Notes: a model not told the origin generated them from the letters alone. 64,000 nucleotides of DNA from Octopus sinensis (GCF_006345805.1 NC_043008.1:49104001-49168000), one strand, 5' to 3'. Positions 17,291-61,542 are shown, counted from the first letter of the stretch. Numbers and translations are program-made.

Positions 17291-18619
17291 CACCCAGAAC
17301 CACGCTAATAGCTTAGGAGTGAAATAGAAGGCCTTAACGACGAAGAAAAATGTGTCATCATCAAAGGAAGTGCTAAAGGCACCTCTCTTCATGTTATTGC
17401 GGAGAAGTTAGGTCGTCATGTGGACACCGTTGGACGATTCCTGAAGGATCCTTCGCCAAGGAAGAAACTATCTGATTGTGGAACCTCGAAGACTGTGACG
17501 GCTAGGGATTTAAGGAATATTGGCCACAAGTTTAGGGGGGAAACCTGGACACACAATCAAAGCCGGACTATCGAAAACCACCAGAAATTGTATCCTCGGG
17601 GCCATAGCTTCCGTGCGAGAACCCCTGAAAGTCCCTCCTTTAACGCCTCGTCACAGAAGTTTGAGGCTTCAATGGGCCCAAAAGTACATGACGTTAGACA
17701 TGAGTTGTGTTCTGTTCACTGACGAAACCAGAGCGACCCTTGACGGACCTGATTGTTGGGCAAATGGTTGGGTCTGTTTTGGAGATGTGCGTCACCAACG
17801 TTTACGACGTTAACAACAGGGTGGAGGAGTCATGTTGTGGGCTGGTATCACTGGGGACAGATTTGTTGACCCAGTCAGGGTACCTGAAGAGGTTGAAGTG
17901 ACCGTAGCCGCCTGCTGCAATCTCCTGAAGGACATCTTAGATTCCTGGCTACATGACATACTGCTGTCACTTCTAAGGAATCTCGTATTCGTGCATGACA
18001 ACGCTCCCTACCACTCGGCTAGGGCCACCCAAACATTCTTAAGGTCTTACCGCATATAAGGTGAAAGGCTGATAATGTGGCCGCTAGCATCTCCGGATCT
18101 CAACCCTATCGAAAATCTTTGGTCCATCGTCAAACAAGATGTTTATGCCGATGAACGCCAATTTACGTCGAAAGATGTCTTATGGGCGACCAGCAGAGGC
18201 TGTCCAACCTGCTACTATTAAGAAATTAACAGATTCCATAACTAATAGGGTTTTTGATGTTATCCATCAAAATGGCGCTCATGTGGCTAAATAATTCATT
18301 ATGTCAATAAATGTTATAACATTATTATGGTTTTCTATTAAATATATACTCAATGTATGCTCAATATGTATCGTTACCTTACATTTTCTGGGAAAAAATG
18401 TCTAGATGGGCCATTTTCATTCAAAAGTTATTAGCGTGGTTCACCCAAAAACTAAAGATTCTGAAATTAAAAAAAAGGGCGTTACACAGAATAATGGAAA
18501 CCTAACAATGGTATTGCCAAAGTGTGAAAACCAGCTGGGAAAAGTTTTATCAAAAACGATTAACAGAAAACCGAGAAATCCTAAATTTCACACCCAAGCT
18601 TTTAGCGTGGTTCTGGGTG
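17291..18619 (+). mobile_element. Tc1-like DNA transposon, DD37E (TRT-type), defective
   Basis: 34-bp TIRs (cacccagaaccacgctaatagcttaggagtgaaa, 3 mismatches) with TA on both sides; VLFTDETRATLDGPD, VHDNAPYH, WPLASPDLNPIENLW with 37 residues between D and E; stops and frameshifts. Confidence 0.92.
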
Positions 18620-28410: not shown

Positions 28411-29236
28411 CTGATAATAACAATTGCTGTAAATATAAATGGGGTTCGCTTATTTTTTCCTTATTATTTTCTATTTTTGCTATGATGTCAACCACTAAGT
28501 GATGCGGAAAATGAAAATATCCTAAGAAAAAAAGCCATTTCTGTATTAGGAATTTACCAAACTATTCACTAACCTTCGCAAAGTATTTATCTACACAATA
28601 TACTGGCCCTGCTGTATTCCACAGTCATTCTCTGAAACAATACTTTTACACGTGGCTATGTAGATACATATACACACACACACACACACACACACTATTA
28701 TATACACATATATACATACACACACTATTATATACACAAATATATATATAGATCCACACACATGTACACATACATGCACACATATATATATATATACATA
28801 CATAAACATATATACATACACATATACCCACACATATATACATACACATATACCTACATATATATATACATACAGACACACATATATACACATATACACA
28901 CACACATGAATACATGCACATACACGTATATATGTGTATTCTTAGATTCACACGTCAGTCCTGAGAGAGAAGACTGGGTAATGACAGTCCAATTCATTCA
29001 ACCATTTCTAGTGAATACATCATTAATAAAAAATATACATTCTTAACGAGAAACTGATTTATCATCATGTTGTGCTAATTAACTTAAGCGATTGTTTTAA
29101 TTAGGAGAAAAGAAAAATATTTACAATAAAACAGCTTGGCCAACATTTAATGTAACGTGAAGGGGATTTGAACTGATGATATTCCGTTTTAAAAGAAAAT
29201 AAATATCAACATTTAAATTTACAACAAATGTGTAAA

Positions 29237-29535
29237 TATTGTTGTATTTCCGGATGGTCATTTTTTTTTTCTTTTTTTTTTTTTGCCAAATAAACACACA
29301 CTGTATATATATTCGTTCTTCCCTTGTTTATTACTGGTCTTATTCTAACTTGTGTCCATCATCCGGAAATCTTTCATCACACATCTGTGACCTCCTCAGC
29401 GACACTATCCATCCTCAGGTGTGCTCTTGCTCTGGACAATGGACACGAGTTAAAAATAAGAACAGTAATAAACAAGTGATGGACGAATATACAGTGCAAA
29501 AAGGGAAAAAATGACCATCCCGAAATAGAACAATA
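29237..29535. mobile_element. Fold-back MITE
   Basis: approximately 110-bp imperfect inverted arms beginning tattgtt(g/c)tatttc(c/g)ggatggtcatttttt. Confidence 0.8.
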
Positions 29536-30813
29536 TCTGCTTCAACACACAGTTTCACATCAAGAATCTTGCAACACAAACTCACATATATATATATATA
29601 TATATATATATCTATATGTATAGGTATATACATAGCAGCTATGTACAGGGATATATATACAGAATAAATTAAGAGATGAGAAATAAAACTGCAAAGAAGT
29701 GTTTTTACAAGCAATAACCAAAATAAGTGTTCAATGATTGTGATCGAAAAAAAGCATTGATCTGTGAAACTAGAACAAAAGAAGAAGAAGAGATGTACTC
29801 GTTTAACTTTCTGTGTACGGCAGTCCGTTAATTGACTATAGTAATTAAAAAACAAAAAACCCAGAGACCAACTTCGCAGTTGGTAATATAAGTGCCATAT
29901 TAGATGTGCTGATTGCGGGTGGGTTAATTGATTAATTAATTCCTATAGTTTAACCATTATCACAAGGGTAAGACATCAGTAACGACTGCATTTAATCAAC
30001 AACTTTAATTATCGCTGTTGTCTTAGCAGTAATTTGTCCAACTCTGGCATCTATCAACAGAATGATGCAGTTTTGAATTAATGACACCTATTATCCAGTG
30101 AGATTGTTTCCAAGAAGAGTGTGTATGTGTGTGTGTGTGTATATATATATGTATATATAAAATTGTATGTATAATATATATGCATATATATAATACATAT
30201 ATACACACATTTATATATATAAAGTTTATATACATTAGACATATATATATTTAGCAGAAGCAACAGAGTGACTCTAGGTCCAAGAGCTTCATGTGTTGGT
30301 TTTATATATATATACATATGTACGTTTATATATATAAAGTTTATATACATTAGACATACATATATATATATATATATACGCACACACACACGTTTGTGCA
30401 AGTCTTTCTCTACTGGTTACACAGGAGGAAACATTAAGTCTAAATGTTACAAATGAGAAAAGCCATTATTAATTAGTATAGTTAATGAGTAATGTAGCTG
30501 ATATTCACATAAACATCTGAAAGGGGACCTGCCCATAAAGGAAACGTTTAAAAAAAAAAACCTTTAAAAATTCATTGTGACATAAGAAATTTTGAGAGAT
30601 TTTTTTTTCTTTCAAGATATCAGAATTCTGGATAAAAATAGACATCATCATAACACAACTTTGTCAAAAACGTCTATCGAATATCAATAAAATAATTAGA
30701 AATTTCAAAAGAAAAAAAATAGATTTTCTTTTTTTTCTTTCTGTGTCTTTGTTTTGTTTTGGTTTTTTTTTTTTTTTGTTAGGGAAGTGGTTTTGTGATT
30801 TGCGTCACCAGTA

Positions 30814-31425
30814 TTATGAAGGGTTCCCAATAAGGTGCCCATTTATGCAGAACAACTGCAAAGAATAGAGAATCCCAGTTTTAAAGCCCTGAATAGTTTC
30901 TTTGTGATTGACAGGCGAATGACACGTCGGACAGCAGACAAACGACAACAACGTGTTGAGGCAGTCCATGTTGACCGTGATCCCACCTTTCTCTTTGGCA
31001 ATCAGTTCTAAAGGAGTCAATATACTAGTTGAATAAGTGGCATTGGCACTGGTCACAAGTGACGCTGAACCCTCGTTATTCTGAGGTAAGAGTTCAAACG
31101 GTAACAAAGTCTGTGCAGATTGTTGCTGGTGCAACGTAATCCGGTTAATGGTGTCTTGTTGGTTTAACTGGTGTATTTGTTGCTTGATGGCCGCGATATT
31201 CGGTATGTTGACATCGTTTTGGTTTGTAGAAATAATATTGGTGTTCGTCATAGAGCTGTTGGAGGGAACAGCCGTACTGCTGAAGCTGCCCAACACCGAC
31301 AAGGAGTTCACAGACGCAGAAGTTACAGACACTGGTGGCTCGATAAAGTGGGTCTCATCGCTTTCTTGTTTGATGATTGTAGTAATGCTTGGATCGCTCT
31401 TCAGGGAAAATGCTTGCATCACGTG
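30814..31425 (-). CDS. Terminal coding exon of the BEN gene: S/T/Q-rich linker plus C-terminal Cys/His motif
   Basis: ttctgttcatcatttcag acceptor, phase 0; 203 codons plus stop; HVMQAFSLKSDPS...FVCCPTCHSP...LFCINGHLIGNPS*. Confidence 0.8.
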   Translation of the reverse strand, partial: HVMQAFSLKSDPSITTIIKQESDETHFIEPPVSVTSASVNSLSVLGSFSSTAVPSNSSMTNTNIISTNQNDVNIPNIAAIKQQIHQLNQQDTINRITLHQQQSAQTLLPFELLPQNNEGSASLVTSANATYSTSILTPLELIAKEKGGITVNMDCLNTLLSFVCCPTCHSPVNHKETIQGFKTGILYSLQLFCINGHLIGNPS

Positions 31426-34676: not shown

Positions 34677-34777
34677 CTCTTTCTTAGCTCTCCATTTATG
34701 ATATGAAAGTTTTCTGTACATTGCTTGTCGCAGGGTCACTGGGGAACAATTACCTTCCTGGTTCTTCTGAACCCACA
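34677..34777 (-). CDS. Exon completing the BEN domain
   Basis: ttttccag acceptor, GAG/GTAAAA donor; 101 nt, phase 1 to 0; (L)WVQKNQEGNCSPVTLRQAMYRKLSYHKWRAKKE; in frame with both neighbours. Confidence 0.8.
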
Positions 34778-35018: not shown

Positions 35019-35655
35019 AGTAGTGGAAGAATGTTATTTTCTCTGACAAATCATCCTTTGCCTTATTTCCGACCACCAGCCCAAAGAAGCATTTGATTCA
35101 GACTGCATTCTTCCAACTATTAAACATGGAGGAAGATCTGTGATGATCTGGCAGGTGGTTTATATCTTGGAAAGTTCTGCCAGCCCAGTGGCTTCCCTTC
35201 ATGGCAGAAATAATAGTCAAGACTATTTAAGCATTTTATCTGATCAGATTCATTCTATGATTGTAGAACCGTTTCCAGAGGGAAATGCAATCTTTCAGGA
35301 TGATACTGCACCAATTCACACAGCTAAAGTTGTTACTGAATGGCACGGGGAACATTCTAGTGAAGTTGAACATCTTATCTGGCCACCACAGACCCCAGAT
35401 CTCAATATTATTGAACATTTATGGTGCATTTTAGAAAAACAAATAAGGAGTCAATATCCTCCACCATCATCACTACAAGATCTGGAGACTGTTTTAGCTG
35501 AAGAATAAACAAAAATTCCTTTGCAAACAATTCAAACTTTGTACAAGTTCATACCTTGTAGAATCCAAGCTGCAATTACTGCCAAAGGCAGTCCTACCCC
35601 ATATTAAAAGAAATTTGTTTAAAATTTTAAGGTGTTTCTATTATTTTGTCCAACC

Positions 35656-35659
<4 letters not shown>
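35019..35659 (+). mobile_element. Tc1-like transposon 3' fragment, DD36E spacing
   Basis: WKNVIFSD, PTIKHGGRSVMIW, FQDDTAPIH, WPPQTPDLNIIEHLW; right TIR-like end ggtgtttctattattttgtccaacccctg. Confidence 0.88.
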
Positions 35660-35701
<42 letters not shown>

Positions 35702-35721
35702 TGTGTGTGTATATATATATA

Positions 35722-35915
35722 TAACGGGAAGCTTTATGAAAATAAACAAAAGACGAAGGCAGGTGGAGTACAAACAAACAATTGTATTAGTATGGCGCTC
35801 AGAAATATAAATAAAACATGTCTTTTACGTTTAAAGCCTACGCTCTTCAACAGAAAGATACACAGAAAAGAAACACGGAGAGAAACAAGAGAAAAAAATG
35901 CGTGCAGAAGCTAGC
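35722..35915 (-). mobile_element. Penelope-like pLTR remnant, same family as the 6.8-7.1 kb copy
   Basis: reverse complement reads TCTTT-CTGTTGAA-GAGC-GTAG-GCTT-TAAACGTA-AAAGA and shares the downstream cctgccttcgtcttt tract. Confidence 0.6.
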
Positions 35916-35923
35916 GATTCAAC

Positions 35924-36159
35924 ATATATATATATATATATATAATATATACATATACATATATATACATATATACATATATATATACATATATATATAT
36001 ATATACATATATATATACATATATATATATATATACACATATATACACATATATACATACACACATATATATATACATATATATATACATATATATATAC
36101 ATATATATTACATATATATATACATATATATATACATATATATATACATATATATATAT

Positions 36160-36234
<75 letters not shown>

Positions 36235-36429
36235 TATATACATATACATATATATTACATATATACATATATATATACATATATATATATATATACATAT
36301 ATATATACATATATATATATATATACATATATATATACATATATATATACATATATATATACATATATATATACATATATATATACATTATATATATACA
36401 TATATATATACAATATATATACATATATA

Positions 36430-36481
<52 letters not shown>

Positions 36482-36488
36482 GTATATA

Positions 36489-36522
<34 letters not shown>

Positions 36523-37692
36523 CTCTTTTACATGTTTCAGTCATTTGACTGCGGCCATGCTGGAGCACCGCTTTTAGTCGAGCAAATCGACCCCGGACTT
36601 ATTCTTTGTAAGCCCAGTACTTATTCTATCAGTCTATTTTGCCTAACCGCTAAGTGATGGGGACGTACACATACCAGCATCGGCTGTCAAGCAATGCTAG
36701 GGGGACAAACACAGACACACAAACACACACACATACATACATACATATACATATATATACATATATACGACAGGTTTCTTTCAGTTTCCGTCTACCAAAT
36801 CCACTCACAAGGCATTGGTCGGACCGAGGCTATAGCAGAAAACACTTGCTCAAGGTGCCACACAGTGGGACTGAACCCGGAACCATATGGTTGGTTAGCA
36901 AGCTACATACCACTCACCCACTCCTGCGCCTATGCATATATACATACACATGCACATATATACATATATATATACACATATATACATAGATACATATATA
37001 TACACACATATACATACATACATACACATATATATATATATACACACACACATATATACATATATATACACATATACACACATATATATATACACATATA
37101 TACATACACACATATATACACACATATATACATATACATATATACACATAGGAGGAGGAAGAAGTGGAAGAGGGGGGGAGGAGGGGAGGAGGAGGAGGGG
37201 GAAGGAGAGGAGGAGGGGGAGGGGGAGGAGGGGAAGAGGGGGAAGAAGTGGAGGAGGAGGTGGAGGGGTATATGTCCAACATTTCGTGAACTTTAGGCAA
37301 CTTCAATGAGGACAATAGCAAAGATGATTCAGCGTTAAATGTGAACTGCAGAGTTGCGTCCCTTTGACCAATCTTCTTTCATGCAAAGTTTTTCTGCCAA
37401 GCGATATTTTGCAGTCAATAAGGATGAAAATAAGAAAATGATGATGAGGATGACGATGATTACGATAAAAGTAATTCTCTCGATTATGGGGCACAAGGCC
37501 TGAAACTGAAGCTAGTCGATTACATCGGCCCCACCCCACCCCCGGTTCTTAACTGGTTCTTATTTCAGGAACCTTGAAAGGATGACAGGCAAACATGACC
37601 TCAGTGAAATTGGAACTAAGAACATTATATATATATATATGTATGTATGTATATATGTATGTATGTATATATATATGTGTATATATATAATA

Positions 37693-37727
<35 letters not shown>

Positions 37728-37814
37728 GTGTATATATATATATAATATATATATGTATGTATGTATGTATGTGTATTTATATGTATTATATATATGTATG
37801 TATGTATGTGCATG

Positions 37815-37859
<45 letters not shown>

Positions 37860-37864
37860 GCATG

Positions 37865-37914
<50 letters not shown>

Positions 37915-37991
37915 TGTATATATATATGTATTTCGTTTTCCTTGTTTCAGCTCAGAGCTGCAGCCATGCTGATGCACCGCTGTTATATATG

Positions 37992-38027
<36 letters not shown>

Positions 38028-38061
38028 CGTACATACATATATATATATATATTATATATAT

Positions 38062-38104
<43 letters not shown>

Positions 38105-38345
38105 TACATATAATATACATATATATATACATAATATATACATATATATACATATACATATATATATAATATACATATATATAACATATATATATACATA
38201 TACATATATATATATATATATATATACATATATATATACATATACATATATATATGCATATATATATATATACATAATATATACATATATATATACTAGT
38301 AGTAGTAGTGGTGGTGGTGGTGGTGGTAGTAGTAGTAGTAGTAGT
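35924..38345. repeat. Cluster of long (TA)n/(TACA)n microsatellites interleaved with SINEs
   Basis: 35924-36521, 36935-37150, 37627-38295, plus purine tract 37150-37265. Confidence 0.95.
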
Positions 38346-38356
38346 AAATCACTTAC

Positions 38357-38552
38357 AGATAATAGCTTTCGTAAGCAAAGGGTTTAATAACCTTCCGCAT
38401 CCTCGTACAGACAAAGTCCCACTTTTCATTTGGTCCTTGCTGAACAAGAAATTCATTAAAATTCGTACCATAGCTTGACCATCAGTCTTCTTACGAATCA
38501 CTTCAAAATATTGGTCAGAATGGATGTACACACCAAAACCTATGTGCACCAT
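38357..38552 (-). CDS. Exon encoding the core of a BEN domain (BEN-domain protein gene)
   Basis: ttccag acceptor and GTAAGT donor; 196 nt, phase 0 to 1; [65 protein letters not shown] fits the BEN pattern (MVRxLMxxLFS...GTLS...LNP...AII). Confidence 0.85.
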
Positions 38553-38929
38553 CTGGAACAAAAAACAAAAAAACAAATAAATGAAATTGGTTAATCTTTA
38601 TTCCAACAACAATTACAGAGAACTTTCATTCGCAGTCCATAACACTTTGCAGAATTGTGTCACAGTCTCAGATCATTTTTTCACACATTCATATAAAGCT
38701 TCTTTTATCACCAATACAGAATGGCAGGTCTTAAATATATTTTATCCCTCTAGAAATCTTCAGTCACTTTGATCCTCATCAGCTTCATTGCCAGCACTGT
38801 CCTATGCCTACAGATGAGCTTCTGCCACTAAAAACCACTTGATGCAACCCTCAGGCATCAGTCTGCTGACCTGCAGCAGTGGTTGTAGTCCCTCTGCCAT
38901 GTGGTGCATCTTAGTTTTGTAGTGCTTTT

Positions 38930-39385
38930 CCCCTGCTTGTCAATTTTTTGCAAAGGCTGAAACGAAGGAACAGCATACTTCCATGAAATTCTGTTTTCAG
39001 CTGGGGGAAATGGCAGCTGAAACAGTTACCATGCTTCAAACAGTTTATAAAGCCACTGCCATGAGCAAAACACAAGTTTACAAGTGGTTTTCATGCTTTA
39101 GGAATGGTTACTCGTTGCTTGAGGACCAACCTTGTTCAGGGCCACTGTCAACCTCACAAATGAATGAAAACATCCTGAAAATTCATGAACTGATCTTGGA
39201 GGACAATCACTGAACAATTGACGAACTTGTTGAAGACTGGTGTGTCCTGGAGCTCCAACCAACAAATTTTGAGTAAGGAATTGTGAACGAAAAGAGTTGC
39301 AACAAAATTTGTTCCTCGCTTGCTCACGGAAGATCAAAAGCAGTCACGACTGAATGCATGTTGTGAACTGAAAGAACAGTTGGAG
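38930..39385 (+). mobile_element. mariner transposase N-terminal fragment
   Basis: EQHTSMKFCFQLGEMAAETVTMLQTVY...SKTQVYKWFSCFRNG...EDQPCSG; later aaatttgttcctcgcttgctcac (KFVPRLL-type motif). Confidence 0.85.
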
Positions 39386-40106: not shown

Positions 40107-40182
40107 CTGATATTTCTCAGCATCTTCGGCAGAAACTAAGCCCGCATTTGGTCTTCCATGCTTTAACGTGTCCATGTGTTGG
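40107..40182 (-). CDS. Exon upstream of the BEN exon (duplicated exon, copy A)
   Basis: tttctttctcatattag acceptor, CAG/GTATAT donor; 76 nt, phase 2 to 0; QHMDTLKHGRPNAGLVSAEDAEKYQ. Confidence 0.7.
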
Positions 40183-40385
40183 CTAATATGAGAAAGAAAA
40201 ATGTAATTTAATACACAGATTATAAATATATATACACACAAAAACACCCTGGAAATATATTTATACGTAGGAAGGGGAGGGGACAAATGCCACAATAAAC
40301 AAGAATAAAATATCACCAGCAAGGGCTAATGAGTTATACATAATTATACGAATGCATACTTCTGTTAATGAACACAGAGTTACAC

Positions 40386-40453
40386 CTGATATTTTTCAGC
40401 TTCTTCAGCAGAAACTGAACCAACATATGGTCTTCCATACTTTTGCACAAATC
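40386..40453 (-). CDS. Duplicated exon, copy B (alternative exon or pseudoexon)
   Basis: 68 nt, phase 1 to 0; FVQKYGRPYVGSVSAEEAEKYQ, clearly paralogous to copy A; weak AAG acceptor, CAG/GTGTAA donor. Confidence 0.5.
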
Positions 40454-60500: not shown

Positions 60501-61542
60501 TACTAACAATAATCATAAGCAACGATATTTACAATAACAACAACAATAATAATGAATGGTGAGAAAGAAAAACCTTGGAAGCTTTTCCAAGAAATTGAAA
60601 ATAAAGCAAGAACAATAATATATATGCGTGTGTGATACAGATATTGATATATATATATACATATATATATACAGGGAGAGAGATCAGGGTGTAACAGGGT
60701 GGAGGAGAAACAGATTTGAATGTTTATAAAACAAGTGCAGAGGAAAATAAATAGAAAAAATATTAAGAGTAAAAAGTAGCACAAAGGTGGCCGTAAAGTC
60801 AGTGGTTGATTTGCCATTGTGAGATGTGTCAAACTGATCCCGGACTTTGTGGCATACAATGAAAACATTGAAACAATATGGAGATGATGTTCTGAGCGGG
60901 GAAAGACGGCGAAATTTCTGTCTCGATGGACGGGTTTGGGTTAAGGTAAAGGGTATATACTCACCCCAAATATCTATCCTGTTGAGAAAACATACGTTGG
61001 TCTTGATGGGAAGCGAGAATAAGACATTATTGGTGAAATAAATAATAGATCCGATCGCTGAAGCGTCCACAGTTTAAAGCGCAACTGTTACCACAACGAG
61101 GCTTCGATCGATTAGTCATGTCTCAACAGAAAATTCGGGCAATGACTGGCAAATGTCTATGTGGAGATTACAAACCAATTAATAGTTTTCTGTTTAATTT
61201 TAAATAATTAATTCTCGAATTTTACACAGAATTTTTATAGCTTACCCGAAAATATAAATTCAGTTTAGTCCAAAATTCCTGCCCTCTTTCTTTTTTTTTT
61301 TTAGAACATGGGTCTTTCTAGAACTTCTTTGAACAATTTCTGTCAAGTCATTCTTGATTGTGCAATATAAATGTATAATAATAATAAAAGAAAAGAAAAA
61401 AGCAAATTTCTGGAACTTACCGAATTTTATAAATACCTGTAAATGAATAAATCGAAATATCTAAAGTATTTATCTTTGAGATTCAAAAGAAATAAAAACA
61501 ATATATTTGATATCTATGGCTACAAATTAATGCCATTCTTAA

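What the first reader, a model, noticed from the sequence alone, without database searches (positions are those of the whole stretch)
30814..30981. BEN-domain protein ends in a transposase-like zinc motif
Seen: the last exon ends ITVNMDCLNTLLSFVCCPTCHSPVNHKETIQGFKTGILYSLQLFCINGHLIGNPS*, a CxxC...CxxH arrangement. From recall, it resembles the N-terminal region of invertebrate Mutator-like transposases (L..LL..V.CP.C...E...GL.S.L.L.C). Inference: a domesticated transposase fragment is fused to a BEN DNA-binding protein through a Q/S/T-rich linker, giving a possibly undescribed chimeric transcription factor.
Basis: partly seen in the sequence, partly recalled or inferred. Interest (0 to 1): 0.7.

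Follow-up and report, generated by a model that had tools for sequence, protein, structure and literature searches.

The report
Cephalopod BEN-like protein with zinc tail
The flagged stretch is the real, strongly conserved C-terminal end of an uncharacterised octopus gene: a probable zinc-binding module that cephalopods also attach to other DNA-binding heads, with an origin from a transposase possible but not shown.

Summary
Window 30981-30814 (minus strand) encodes ITVNMDC...NGHLIGNPS*, the end of the last of five GT-AG exons of a 337-aa gene. It is the ortholog of O. bimaculoides LOC106879503, annotated only as an uncharacterised protein. The Cys/His arrangement is C-x9-C-x2-C-x24-C-x3-H, so the last pair is CxxxH, not CxxH.

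The 66-aa module is under strong purifying selection: 8 synonymous and 0 non-synonymous differences against O. bimaculoides, and 34 against 4 for Argonauta.

The N-terminal domain gets no Pfam BEN hit. It does align full-length with a profile of four solved BEN domains (hhalign P 5e-4; no match among 200 shuffles).

The transposase reading is not established. An anchored scoring test gives only +4 to +8 bits over 24 controls, against +43 for a typical motif. There is no catalytic remnant and no extra copy.

The new point is that the whole last exon is a shared cassette: a SUMO-consensus-like motif, a low-complexity linker and the Cys3His module. It also ends a THAP-headed protein in Argonauta and a Cys-rich-headed protein in Sepia. 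I read the module as a common zinc-dependent interaction domain of a coleoid-specific family of regulators.

The parts
60965..60993 (-). Coding exon 1 (ATG; MFSQQDRYLG, ends in phase 2)
   Evidence: 100% tblastn match to P0001 residues 1-10. GT donor..
40107..40182 (-). Coding exon 2 (QHMDTLKHGRPNAGLVSAEDAEKYQ), carrying the invariant GRPNAGLV motif
   Evidence: AG acceptor and GT donor; the same 76-nt exon is present in O. bimaculoides..
38357..38552 (-). Coding exon 3: first two thirds of the BEN-like domain ([12 protein letters not shown]...LLTKAII)
   Evidence: Spliced model. The same 196-nt exon is present in O. bimaculoides and Argonauta. hhalign to solved BEN domains.
34677..34777 (-). 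Coding exon 4: last, basic helix of the BEN-like domain (LWVQKNQEGNCSPVTLRQAMYRKLSYHKWRAKKE)
30814..31425 (-). Terminal coding exon 5 (aa 135-337 plus stop): the shared cassette of linker and Cys3His module
   Evidence: A homologous last exon is present in the THAP paralog (L001 17413-18018) and in the Sepia and unknown-taxon paralogs.
31354..31374 (-). IKQESDE (aa 152-158): a psi-K-x-E plus acidic motif, like a SUMOylation consensus
   Evidence: Conserved as VKEETDE, VKQERSEE and IKQEPCEEE in orthologs and paralogs. The functional reading is inference.
31084..31107 (-). LLPFELLP (aa 241-248): a short conserved island inside the variable linker
   Evidence: L241, P243, F244, L247 and P248 are invariant in cephalopod orthologs.
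30829..31026 (-). C-terminal module (aa 268-333): SILTPLELIAKEKGGITVNMDCLNTLLSFVCCPTCHSPVNHKETIQGFKTGILYSLQLFCINGHLI
   Evidence: Nearly invariant in cephalopods. dN/dS is about 0-0.01. AF2 of the module alone has mean pLDDT 74.
30922..30933 (-). First putative zinc knuckle, C299-P-T-C302
   Evidence: Invariant in all seven module sequences.
30835..30849 (-). Second putative zinc ligand pair, C327-I-N-G-H331
   Evidence: C, N, G and H are invariant in all seven module sequences.
40383..40442 (-). Degenerate in-frame copy of exon 2 (KYGRPYVGSVSAEEAEKYQ followed by GT), 260 bp upstream of exon 2. It may be an alternative exon or a relic.
   Evidence: Also present in O. bimaculoides at L005 38487-38546.

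Best explanation
The finding is the C-terminal end of a bona fide five-exon gene that is conserved across coleoid cephalopods (octopus, argonaut, cuttlefish). The 337-aa protein has three parts:
- an N-terminal BEN-like DNA-binding domain (aa 36-134);
- a fast-evolving S/T/N/Q-rich linker that begins with a conserved SUMO-consensus-like acidic motif;
- an almost invariant 66-aa C-terminal module with a helix, a CPxC knuckle, beta-hairpins and a CxxxH pair, most likely binding one zinc ion as a zinc-ribbon-type fold.

Linker and module are encoded together in the last exon. This cassette also ends at least two or three other cephalopod proteins whose N-terminal heads differ: a Pfam-confirmed THAP domain in Argonauta, a Cys-rich head in Sepia esculenta, and a third protein known only from its last exon.

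I infer that the module is a common effector domain of a small lineage-specific family of DNA-binding regulators. It would act in zinc-dependent self-association or in recruiting a shared partner, as BTB, SCAN, KRAB or the insect ZAD domain do elsewhere. It would have been spread among the family by gene duplication and exchange of 5' exons.

Shown here: gene structure, conservation and selection, the shared cassette, and BEN-likeness. Inferred: zinc binding, DNA binding by the BEN-like domain, and the interaction role of the module.
For: - Gene model with five GT-AG exons; the four exons also annotated in Argonauta match in size, and O. bimaculoides has all five.
- Uninterrupted spliced transcripts in decapodiforms that carry the same RAKKE|HV junction.
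- Orthologs at 97% (O. bimaculoides), 79% (Argonauta) and 68% (cuttlefish-type) identity, with the module nearly invariant.
- Nei-Gojobori counts for the module: Sd 8 / Nd 0 and Sd 34 / Nd 4, with linker dN roughly ten-fold higher vs Argonauta.
- Exhaustive phmmer finds the module only at the extreme C-terminus of P0005-P0009.
- P0009 is an Argonauta hians protein with a Pfam THAP domain (E 1.9e-15). It is an ordinary 12-kb six-exon gene lying between EMP24 and P450 genes.
- P0007 is expressed in Sepia esculenta larvae.
- The last exons align from their first residues, including the [IV]K[QE]E-acidic motif.
- BEN-likeness: hhalign P 5e-4 over 84 collinear columns; score 25.3 against shuffles of mean 10.6, sd 2.1, max 20. 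The beta-beta-alpha5 order matches the published BEN fold.
- Module fold: AF2 mean pLDDT 74, with two helices followed by short strands.
- The only weak sequence and fold pointers are to zinc ribbons (Trm112p E 0.02; archaeal Trm112 Foldseek E 1.1).
Against: - No experiment or confident structure shows zinc binding or any interaction.
- AF2 of the full protein was unusable (pLDDT 36), and Foldseek hits for the module are all insignificant.
- BEN is not detected by Pfam or by PDB sequence or profile searches. It rests on one profile-profile comparison with a thin query profile (Neff 1.1).
- The effector or dimerisation role is argued only from architecture.
- Near-total invariance of the module would fit a nucleic-acid-binding surface equally well.
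- A marginal similarity to the N-terminal zinc motif of Mutator-like transposases exists. If that similarity is real, it would favour a DNA-binding origin.
- The taxon of P0008 is unknown, so restriction to coleoids is provisional.
Confidence: 0.55

Rival explanations
1. The module is the exapted N-terminal zinc-ribbon DNA-binding domain of a Mutator-like (Pfam PF20700-type) transposase. It was captured by splicing into a transposon and truncated just after the second zinc knuckle. The protein would then carry two DNA-binding domains.
For: - PF20700 really does start with a helix-CxxC...E...G...C..C motif. A from-memory probe of that motif matches profile positions 1-64 of 357 at E 1.7e-8.
- hhalign aligns VCCPTCHSPVNH-KETIQG of the module with the CxxC...ET..G part of the probe. 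Only 2 of 200 shuffles score as well.
- When placed in front of a PF20700 catalytic anchor, the four real modules score 131.6-135.3 bits. The 24 controls (shuffled, ligand-preserving shuffled, reversed and unrelated zinc fingers) have mean 127.5, sd 2.6 and max 132.0. The alignments of the real modules run through both knuckles, from profile position 15-26 onward.
- The architecture of host exons followed by a transposase DNA-binding domain at the C-terminus is that of known host-transposase fusion genes (my own knowledge).
Against: - There is no PF20700 or other transposase hit for any of seven module sequences at E up to 10.
- The anchored gain is about 6 bits, against about 43 for a typical motif. 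One unrelated THAP fragment reaches 132.0 bits, above one of the four real modules.
- The four modules are homologs of one another, so they count as little more than one observation.
Only the Pfam model is independent data.
- Exhaustive phmmer found no transposase-length protein with the module.
- There is no catalytic remnant downstream and no further copy in 188 kb of cephalopod DNA.
- The second pair is CxxxH and the spacing differs from the family pattern.
Confidence: 0.2
2. The module is a nucleic-acid-binding zinc ribbon of non-transposon origin. It would be a second DNA- or RNA-contacting domain that works alongside the BEN-like, THAP or Cys-rich head.
For: - The module is extremely conserved, more so than the BEN-like domain itself: dN 0.026 against 0.048 versus Argonauta.
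- Zinc ribbons commonly bind nucleic acids (my own knowledge).
- All partner domains in the family are DNA-binding types.
Against: - The module is not basic: 4 K/R against 4 D/E in 70 residues.
- It matches no known DNA-binding zinc-finger family.
- Attachment of the same module to three different DNA-binding heads is more typical of an effector or oligomerisation domain.
Confidence: 0.15
3. The Cys/His pattern is a chance feature of a non-functional or mis-annotated reading frame.
For: CxxC and CxxxH pairs are common by chance in short peptides. The ORF list of this AT-rich, repeat-rich window is full of spurious frames.
Against: - Canonical splice sites and the same exon structure in three genomes.
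- Spliced transcripts in cuttlefish-type RNA assemblies.
- Strong excess of synonymous change.
- All five Cys/His are invariant across paralogs.
Confidence: 0.02

Closest known systems
BEN-solo transcription factors (Drosophila Insensitive, Elba1/Bsg25A, Elba2; vertebrate BEND5/BEND6)
   Same: A small protein with a single BEN-type domain. The N-terminal domain aligns full-length with Insv, Bsg25A, BEND6 and NACC1 BEN domains. It ends in a basic helix, as does the DNA-reading alpha5 of BEN.
   Different: Here the BEN-like domain is N-terminal and is too divergent for Pfam PF10523. It is followed by a conserved Cys3His module that no described BEN protein has.
NACC1/NACC2 (BTB + BEN)
   Same: A BEN DNA-binding domain combined with a separate protein-interaction domain through a long linker.
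   Different: The domain order is reversed. The partner domain here is an unclassified zinc module, not a BTB domain.
N-terminal zinc motif of metazoan Mutator-like transposases (Pfam PF20700, positions 1-64)
   Same: A helix followed by CxxC, about 25-30 residues with an E...G stretch, and then a second knuckle. There is a marginal positive score in the anchored test and in hhalign.
   Different: There is no significant HMM match, the spacing differs, the second pair is CxxxH, no DDE core is present, and the motif sits at the extreme C-terminus of short host proteins.
Lineage-specific effector domains on DNA-binding proteins (insect ZAD, vertebrate KRAB/SCAN, BTB)
   Same: One conserved non-DNA-binding module shared by a family of proteins with DNA-binding domains and restricted to one animal lineage. 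ZAD is itself a zinc-coordinating dimerisation domain (my own knowledge).
   Different: There is no sequence relationship. The family here is tiny (three or four members seen) and its DNA-binding heads are of different classes rather than arrays of one class. The function is untested.
Trm112-type zinc ribbon (Pfam PF03966)
   Same: It is the best sub-threshold Pfam hit (LLSFVCCPTC region; E 0.02 in 5 of 7 members) and the best Foldseek hit (archaeal Trm112 6zxw_H; TM 0.39-0.46).
   Different: Both hits are below significance (15 bits against a cutoff of 22; Foldseek E 1.1). The context and the size of the inserted region differ.
THAP-domain proteins
   Same: The Argonauta paralog P0009 carries a true THAP domain in front of the same cassette.
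   Different: The window protein itself has no THAP domain.

Membership tests
BEN domain (Pfam PF10523) | Match to the Pfam BEN model at or above its gathering score | tested here: not met
   No BEN hit at E up to 10 for the full proteins of three species or for the isolated domain.
BEN domain (Pfam PF10523) | Collinear, near full-length sequence-profile similarity to experimentally solved BEN domains | tested here: met
   hhalign of the ortholog profile A5 against a profile of NACC1, Bsg25A, Insv and BEND6 segments gave P 5e-4 over 84 columns (query 28-112, template 2-94). The local rerun scored 25.3, against 200 column shuffles with mean 10.6, sd 2.1 and max 20.0.
BEN domain (Pfam PF10523) | [quoted passage not shown] | tested here: inconclusive
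   AF2 gives E36-40, E43-46 and then helices in the expected order, but pLDDT is only about 55-65 and Foldseek found no BEN structure.
BEN domain (Pfam PF10523) | Sequence-specific DNA binding through the C-terminal helix | not testable with these tools
   Needs EMSA, PBM or SELEX.
Mutator-like transposase (Pfam PF20700), N-terminal zinc motif | Match to the PF20700 model, whose positions 1-64 cover the motif | tested here: not met
   A generic probe of the motif hits positions 1-64 at E 1.7e-8. None of seven module sequences hits PF20700 at E up to 10.
Mutator-like transposase (Pfam PF20700), N-terminal zinc motif | Positive contribution to the PF20700 score when the module replaces the motif in front of a catalytic anchor | tested here: inconclusive
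   The gain is +4.1 to +7.8 bits over 24 controls (z 1.6-3.1). The top control, a THAP fragment, exceeds one real module. A typical motif adds +43 bits.
Mutator-like transposase (Pfam PF20700) | DDE catalytic core following the zinc motif | tested here: not met
   The protein stops 6 residues after H331. tblastn with the probe found nothing downstream or anywhere in 188 kb of loci.
Mutator-like transposase (Pfam PF20700) | Multiple genomic copies, or transposase-length relatives carrying the motif | tested here: not met
   Exhaustive phmmer found only short host proteins. An HMM scan of 188 kb of cephalopod DNA found only the genic copies. Whole genomes and TE libraries could not be scanned.
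Trm112-like zinc ribbon (Pfam PF03966) | Pfam score at or above 22 bits, or a significant fold match | tested here: not met
   Best score is 15.2 bits (E 0.02). Foldseek to archaeal Trm112 gives E 1.1.
Zinc-binding domain (generic) | Four conserved Cys/His ligands with knuckle spacing; metal actually bound | tested here: inconclusive
   C299, C302, C327 and H331, plus C289, are invariant in all paralogs.

The most novel reading that the evidence does not exclude
The Cys3His module is the exapted N-terminal DNA-binding zinc ribbon of a PF20700-type Mutator-like transposase. It was captured once in the coleoid ancestor and then shuffled, as a last-exon cassette, onto BEN-like, THAP and Cys-rich heads. 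To my knowledge this would be the first Mutator-derived host gene family in animals, with each member carrying two unrelated transposon-type DNA-binding domains.
Probability: 0.2. Interest if true: 0.65.

Novelty: new variant of a known kind. Interest (0 to 1): 0.4.

Why it matters
Cephalopods are known for lineage-specific expansions of regulators. This locus shows a different kind of innovation. A 66-aa probable zinc module, unclassified and almost frozen in sequence, is reused together with its linker as a terminal-exon cassette on at least three classes of DNA-binding head.

If the module proves to be a shared interaction domain, it defines a small coleoid-specific regulatory family that could be studied as a unit: common partner, heterodimers and SUMO control. 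If it proves to be transposase-derived, it would add a Mutator-type case to animal host-transposase fusions.

The locus is also a further example of a BEN domain that Pfam cannot see. The discovery that LIN-14 is a BEN factor was a similar case.

Tried and rejected
- **Pfam scans:** the last exon, the 69-72-aa tail, three full orthologs and all seven modules gave only sub-threshold zinc-knuckle noise (Trm112p, RING, DZR).
- **PDB sequence and profile searches:** the N-terminal domain and the module gave nothing significant.
- **AF2 of the full protein on six sequences:** mean pLDDT 36. Its Foldseek hits are meaningless.
- **Foldseek of the module model:** all hits have E above 1.
- **The search for homologous proteins with the module alignment:** it returned no hits at all, not even the query's own family. 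I treat this as a tool failure, not as a negative result.
- **The search for homologous proteins with the N-terminal domain:** only 3 candidates and 1 hit, which is uninformative.
- **P0010:** a 1355-aa FN3-repeat protein that scored E 4e-11 by summing several weak matches of its repeat (EYTVRGLKNGREYSLQMRAVNQAGYGEPS) to module residues 41-72. I rejected it as a repeat-summed beta-hairpin resemblance.
- **Real Mutator N-terminal sequences:** I looked for them in the supplements of the MULE survey PMC6446971, but those hold only DDE-domain alignments.
- **Submitting the spliced window protein for structure prediction:** I used the O. bimaculoides ortholog instead.

Full report
**1. The observation**

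It closes a 612-nt open frame that starts behind a ttcag acceptor at 31425. The Cys/His pattern is C289-x9-C299-x2-C302-x24-C327-x3-H331, so the last pair is CxxxH rather than CxxH.

**2. The gene**

The last-exon peptide finds O. bimaculoides LOC106879503 (P0001, 339 aa, uncharacterised protein, no precomputed Pfam domain) at 95% identity. It also finds an Argonauta hians ortholog (P0003) and more distant cephalopod proteins (P0004-P0006). One of these clusters contains a protein of the cuttlefish Acanthosepion pharaonis.

Using P0001 as a guide, the window holds five coding exons on the minus strand, all with GT-AG borders:
- 60993-60965
- 40182-40107
- 38552-38357
- 34777-34677
- 31425-30814

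They give a 337-aa protein. O. bimaculoides (L005) has all five exons; the Argonauta model (L006) begins at the second and matches the next two in size. The Argonauta gene spans only 2.6 kb, against 30 kb here. Assemblies of decapodiform sequencing runs contain uninterrupted coding sequences that carry the same RAKKE|HV junction. The splice is therefore used in relatives. It was not checked in the source species.

**3. Conservation**

The last 66-70 residues are almost invariant from octopus to cuttlefish-type sequences, while the preceding linker varies and carries indels. Nei-Gojobori counts for the module (aa 268-333) and the linker are as follows:

| Comparison | Module Sd / Nd | Module dN | Linker dN |
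|---|---|---|---|
| vs O. bimaculoides | 8 / 0 | 0 | 0.031 |
| vs Argonauta | 34 / 4 | 0.026 | 0.29 |
| vs the decapodiform | 35.8 / 10.2 | 0.069 | 0.42 |

This is a constrained coding element, not a chance motif.

**4. The N-terminal domain**

Pfam gives no BEN hit at E up to 10 for three orthologs or for the isolated domain. PDB sequence and profile searches are empty.

It retrieved solved BEN domains: BEND6 7yul, Insv 4ix7, Bsg25A 4x0g, NACC1 8yzs, and also BANP and BEND3. I aligned four of the printed segments.

hhalign of the cephalopod N-terminal profile against this BEN profile gave P 5e-4. The alignment has 84 collinear columns, covering query 28-112 and template 2-94. In a local rerun the score was 25.3. 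Two hundred column shuffles of the BEN profile gave mean 10.6, sd 2.1 and max 20.0, and shuffles of the query reached at most 16.6.

Solved BEN domains have two beta-strands followed by five helices, with alpha5 reading the major groove (PMC11472053). The low-confidence AF2 model shows the same order, and the last helix is basic (SPVTLRQAMYRKLSYHKWRAKKE).

I accept BEN-like as supported, but with a thin profile and no confident structure. LIN-14 (PMC10080584) was likewise recognised as a BEN-domain factor long after its discovery.

**5. The C-terminal module elsewhere**

An exhaustive phmmer search of 1.84 billion representative proteins with the 72-aa tail found six proteins at E up to 0.001. 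They are the cephalopod orthologs, P0007, P0008, P0009, and one spurious FN3-repeat protein whose score is the sum of several weak repeat matches. In every real hit the module lies at the extreme C-terminus.

- **P0009** is an Argonauta hians protein with a Pfam THAP domain (E 1.9e-15). It is encoded by an ordinary six-exon, 12-kb gene between EMP24 and P450 genes.
- **P0007** has a Cys-rich head and a proline-rich linker. It comes from RNA-seq of Sepia esculenta larvae.
- **P0008** is known only from a genomic contig of unknown taxon that holds just the last exon.

In all of them the linker and the module share one terminal exon of about 200 codons. The exons align from their first residues (SLK...), through an [IV]K[QE]E-acidic motif that resembles a SUMOylation consensus, to the module. 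The unit of reuse is therefore the whole last exon, attached to different DNA-binding heads.

**6. What the module is**

AF2 of the module alone, on seven sequences, gives mean pLDDT 74. It predicts two helices (PLELIAKEK and DCLNTLLSF) followed by short strands around the two ligand pairs.

Foldseek against the PDB gives nothing significant. The best hit is archaeal Trm112, a zinc ribbon (E 1.1, TM 0.39-0.46). That is also the family behind the best sub-threshold Pfam hit (15 bits against a cutoff of 22).

The module is not basic: 4 K/R against 4 D/E.

I read it as a zinc-ribbon-type Cys3His domain of no described family.

**7. The transposase hypothesis**

A from-memory probe of the metazoan Mutator-like N-terminal motif matches Pfam PF20700 positions 1-64 of 357 at E 1.7e-8. 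Pfam therefore does test the claim, and the module fails that test.

| Construct | PF20700 score (bits) |
|---|---|
| Anchor alone | 127.9 |
| Four real modules | 133.7, 135.3, 131.6, 133.4 |
| 24 controls | mean 127.5, sd 2.6, max 132.0 |
| Typical motif (probe) | 170.4 |

The 24 controls were 4 full shuffles, 14 ligand-preserving shuffles, 4 reversed modules and 2 unrelated zinc fingers. The alignments of the real modules reach profile positions 15-26.

hhalign of the module profile against the probe aligns only 19 columns (CxxC...ET..G). Two of 200 shuffles do as well.

No transposase remnant lies downstream, and no extra copy exists in 188 kb of cephalopod loci.

Overall the resemblance is weak. 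It may be real, or it may reflect generic zinc-ribbon architecture. It is far from family membership. The probe and the anchor were composed after I had seen the module, so only the Pfam model counts as independent evidence.

**8. Mechanism**

My best reading, at about 0.55, has three parts. All are inferred, not shown:
- The BEN-like domain binds DNA.
- The linker carries regulatory short motifs (IKQESDE and LLPFELLP).
- The invariant zinc module is a common interaction or oligomerisation domain of a small coleoid family of regulators. It is analogous to ZAD, SCAN, KRAB or BTB, and was spread by duplication with exchange of 5' exons.

The rivals are a domesticated Mutator-like DNA-binding domain (0.2), a non-transposon nucleic-acid-binding ribbon (0.15), and chance or artefact (0.02).

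**9. Verdict**

- The feature is a new variant of a known kind: a modular DNA-binding regulator with an undescribed lineage-specific zinc module.
- It is of moderate interest.

Noticed in passing
window 40383-40442 (-); L005 38487-38546: A degenerate in-frame copy of coding exon 2 (KYGRPYVGSVSAEEAEKYQ followed by GT) lies 260 bp upstream of the real exon 2. It is also present in O. bimaculoides, with an in-frame 3-nt insertion. It may be an alternative exon or an old tandem duplication.
   Followed up: partly
window 41418-40555 (-), 38923-39210 (+), 35047-35505 (+), 17312-17810 (+): Tc1/mariner debris lies in introns 1, 2 and 3 and downstream of the gene. Pfam hits are Transposase_1 with an HTH, Mos1 HTH_48, DDE_3 and Tc3 HTH. 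None of it is Mutator-like.
   Followed up: yes
window 48030-45884 (-): A run of ORFs that look like reverse transcriptase or LINE sequence (for example ...LYLAFVDLEKAFDRVP...) in intron 1 gave no Pfam hit at E 0.01.
   Followed up: partly
window 31354-31374 (-) and 31084-31107 (-): Two conserved islands sit in the otherwise variable linker. IKQESDE is like a SUMO consensus with an acidic tail and is shared with paralogs P0007 and P0008. LLPFELLP is shared with orthologs only.
   Followed up: partly
window 40107-40182 (-), aa 19-26: The motif GRPNAGLV ahead of the BEN-like domain is invariant in cephalopods. Its GRP core recalls an AT-hook, but the flanks are not basic.
   Followed up: no
L006 (Argonauta) versus the window and L005: The same gene spans 2.6 kb in Argonauta hians but about 30 kb in the window and 39 kb in O. 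bimaculoides. The Octopus introns are swollen with repeats and transposon debris.
   Followed up: partly
P0011 (Acanthosepion pharaonis CAE1328804.1), P0012-P0015: The annotated cuttlefish protein loses the module because its model runs into non-homologous sequence after ...TTNLQT. Transcript contigs show at least three alternative N-termini (MFARQDRKNRS..., MNVHFGFYYPFRS..., MEVLQ...).
   Followed up: no
window 35600-38300 and 28600-30400: Long AT-rich microsatellite tracts produce many spurious ORFs of the YIYIYI and CVCVCV type on both strands.
   Followed up: no
(tool behaviour): The homolog search with the module alignment returned no hit at E up to 10, although the query's own family is in the database. 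That null should not be used as evidence.
   Followed up: no
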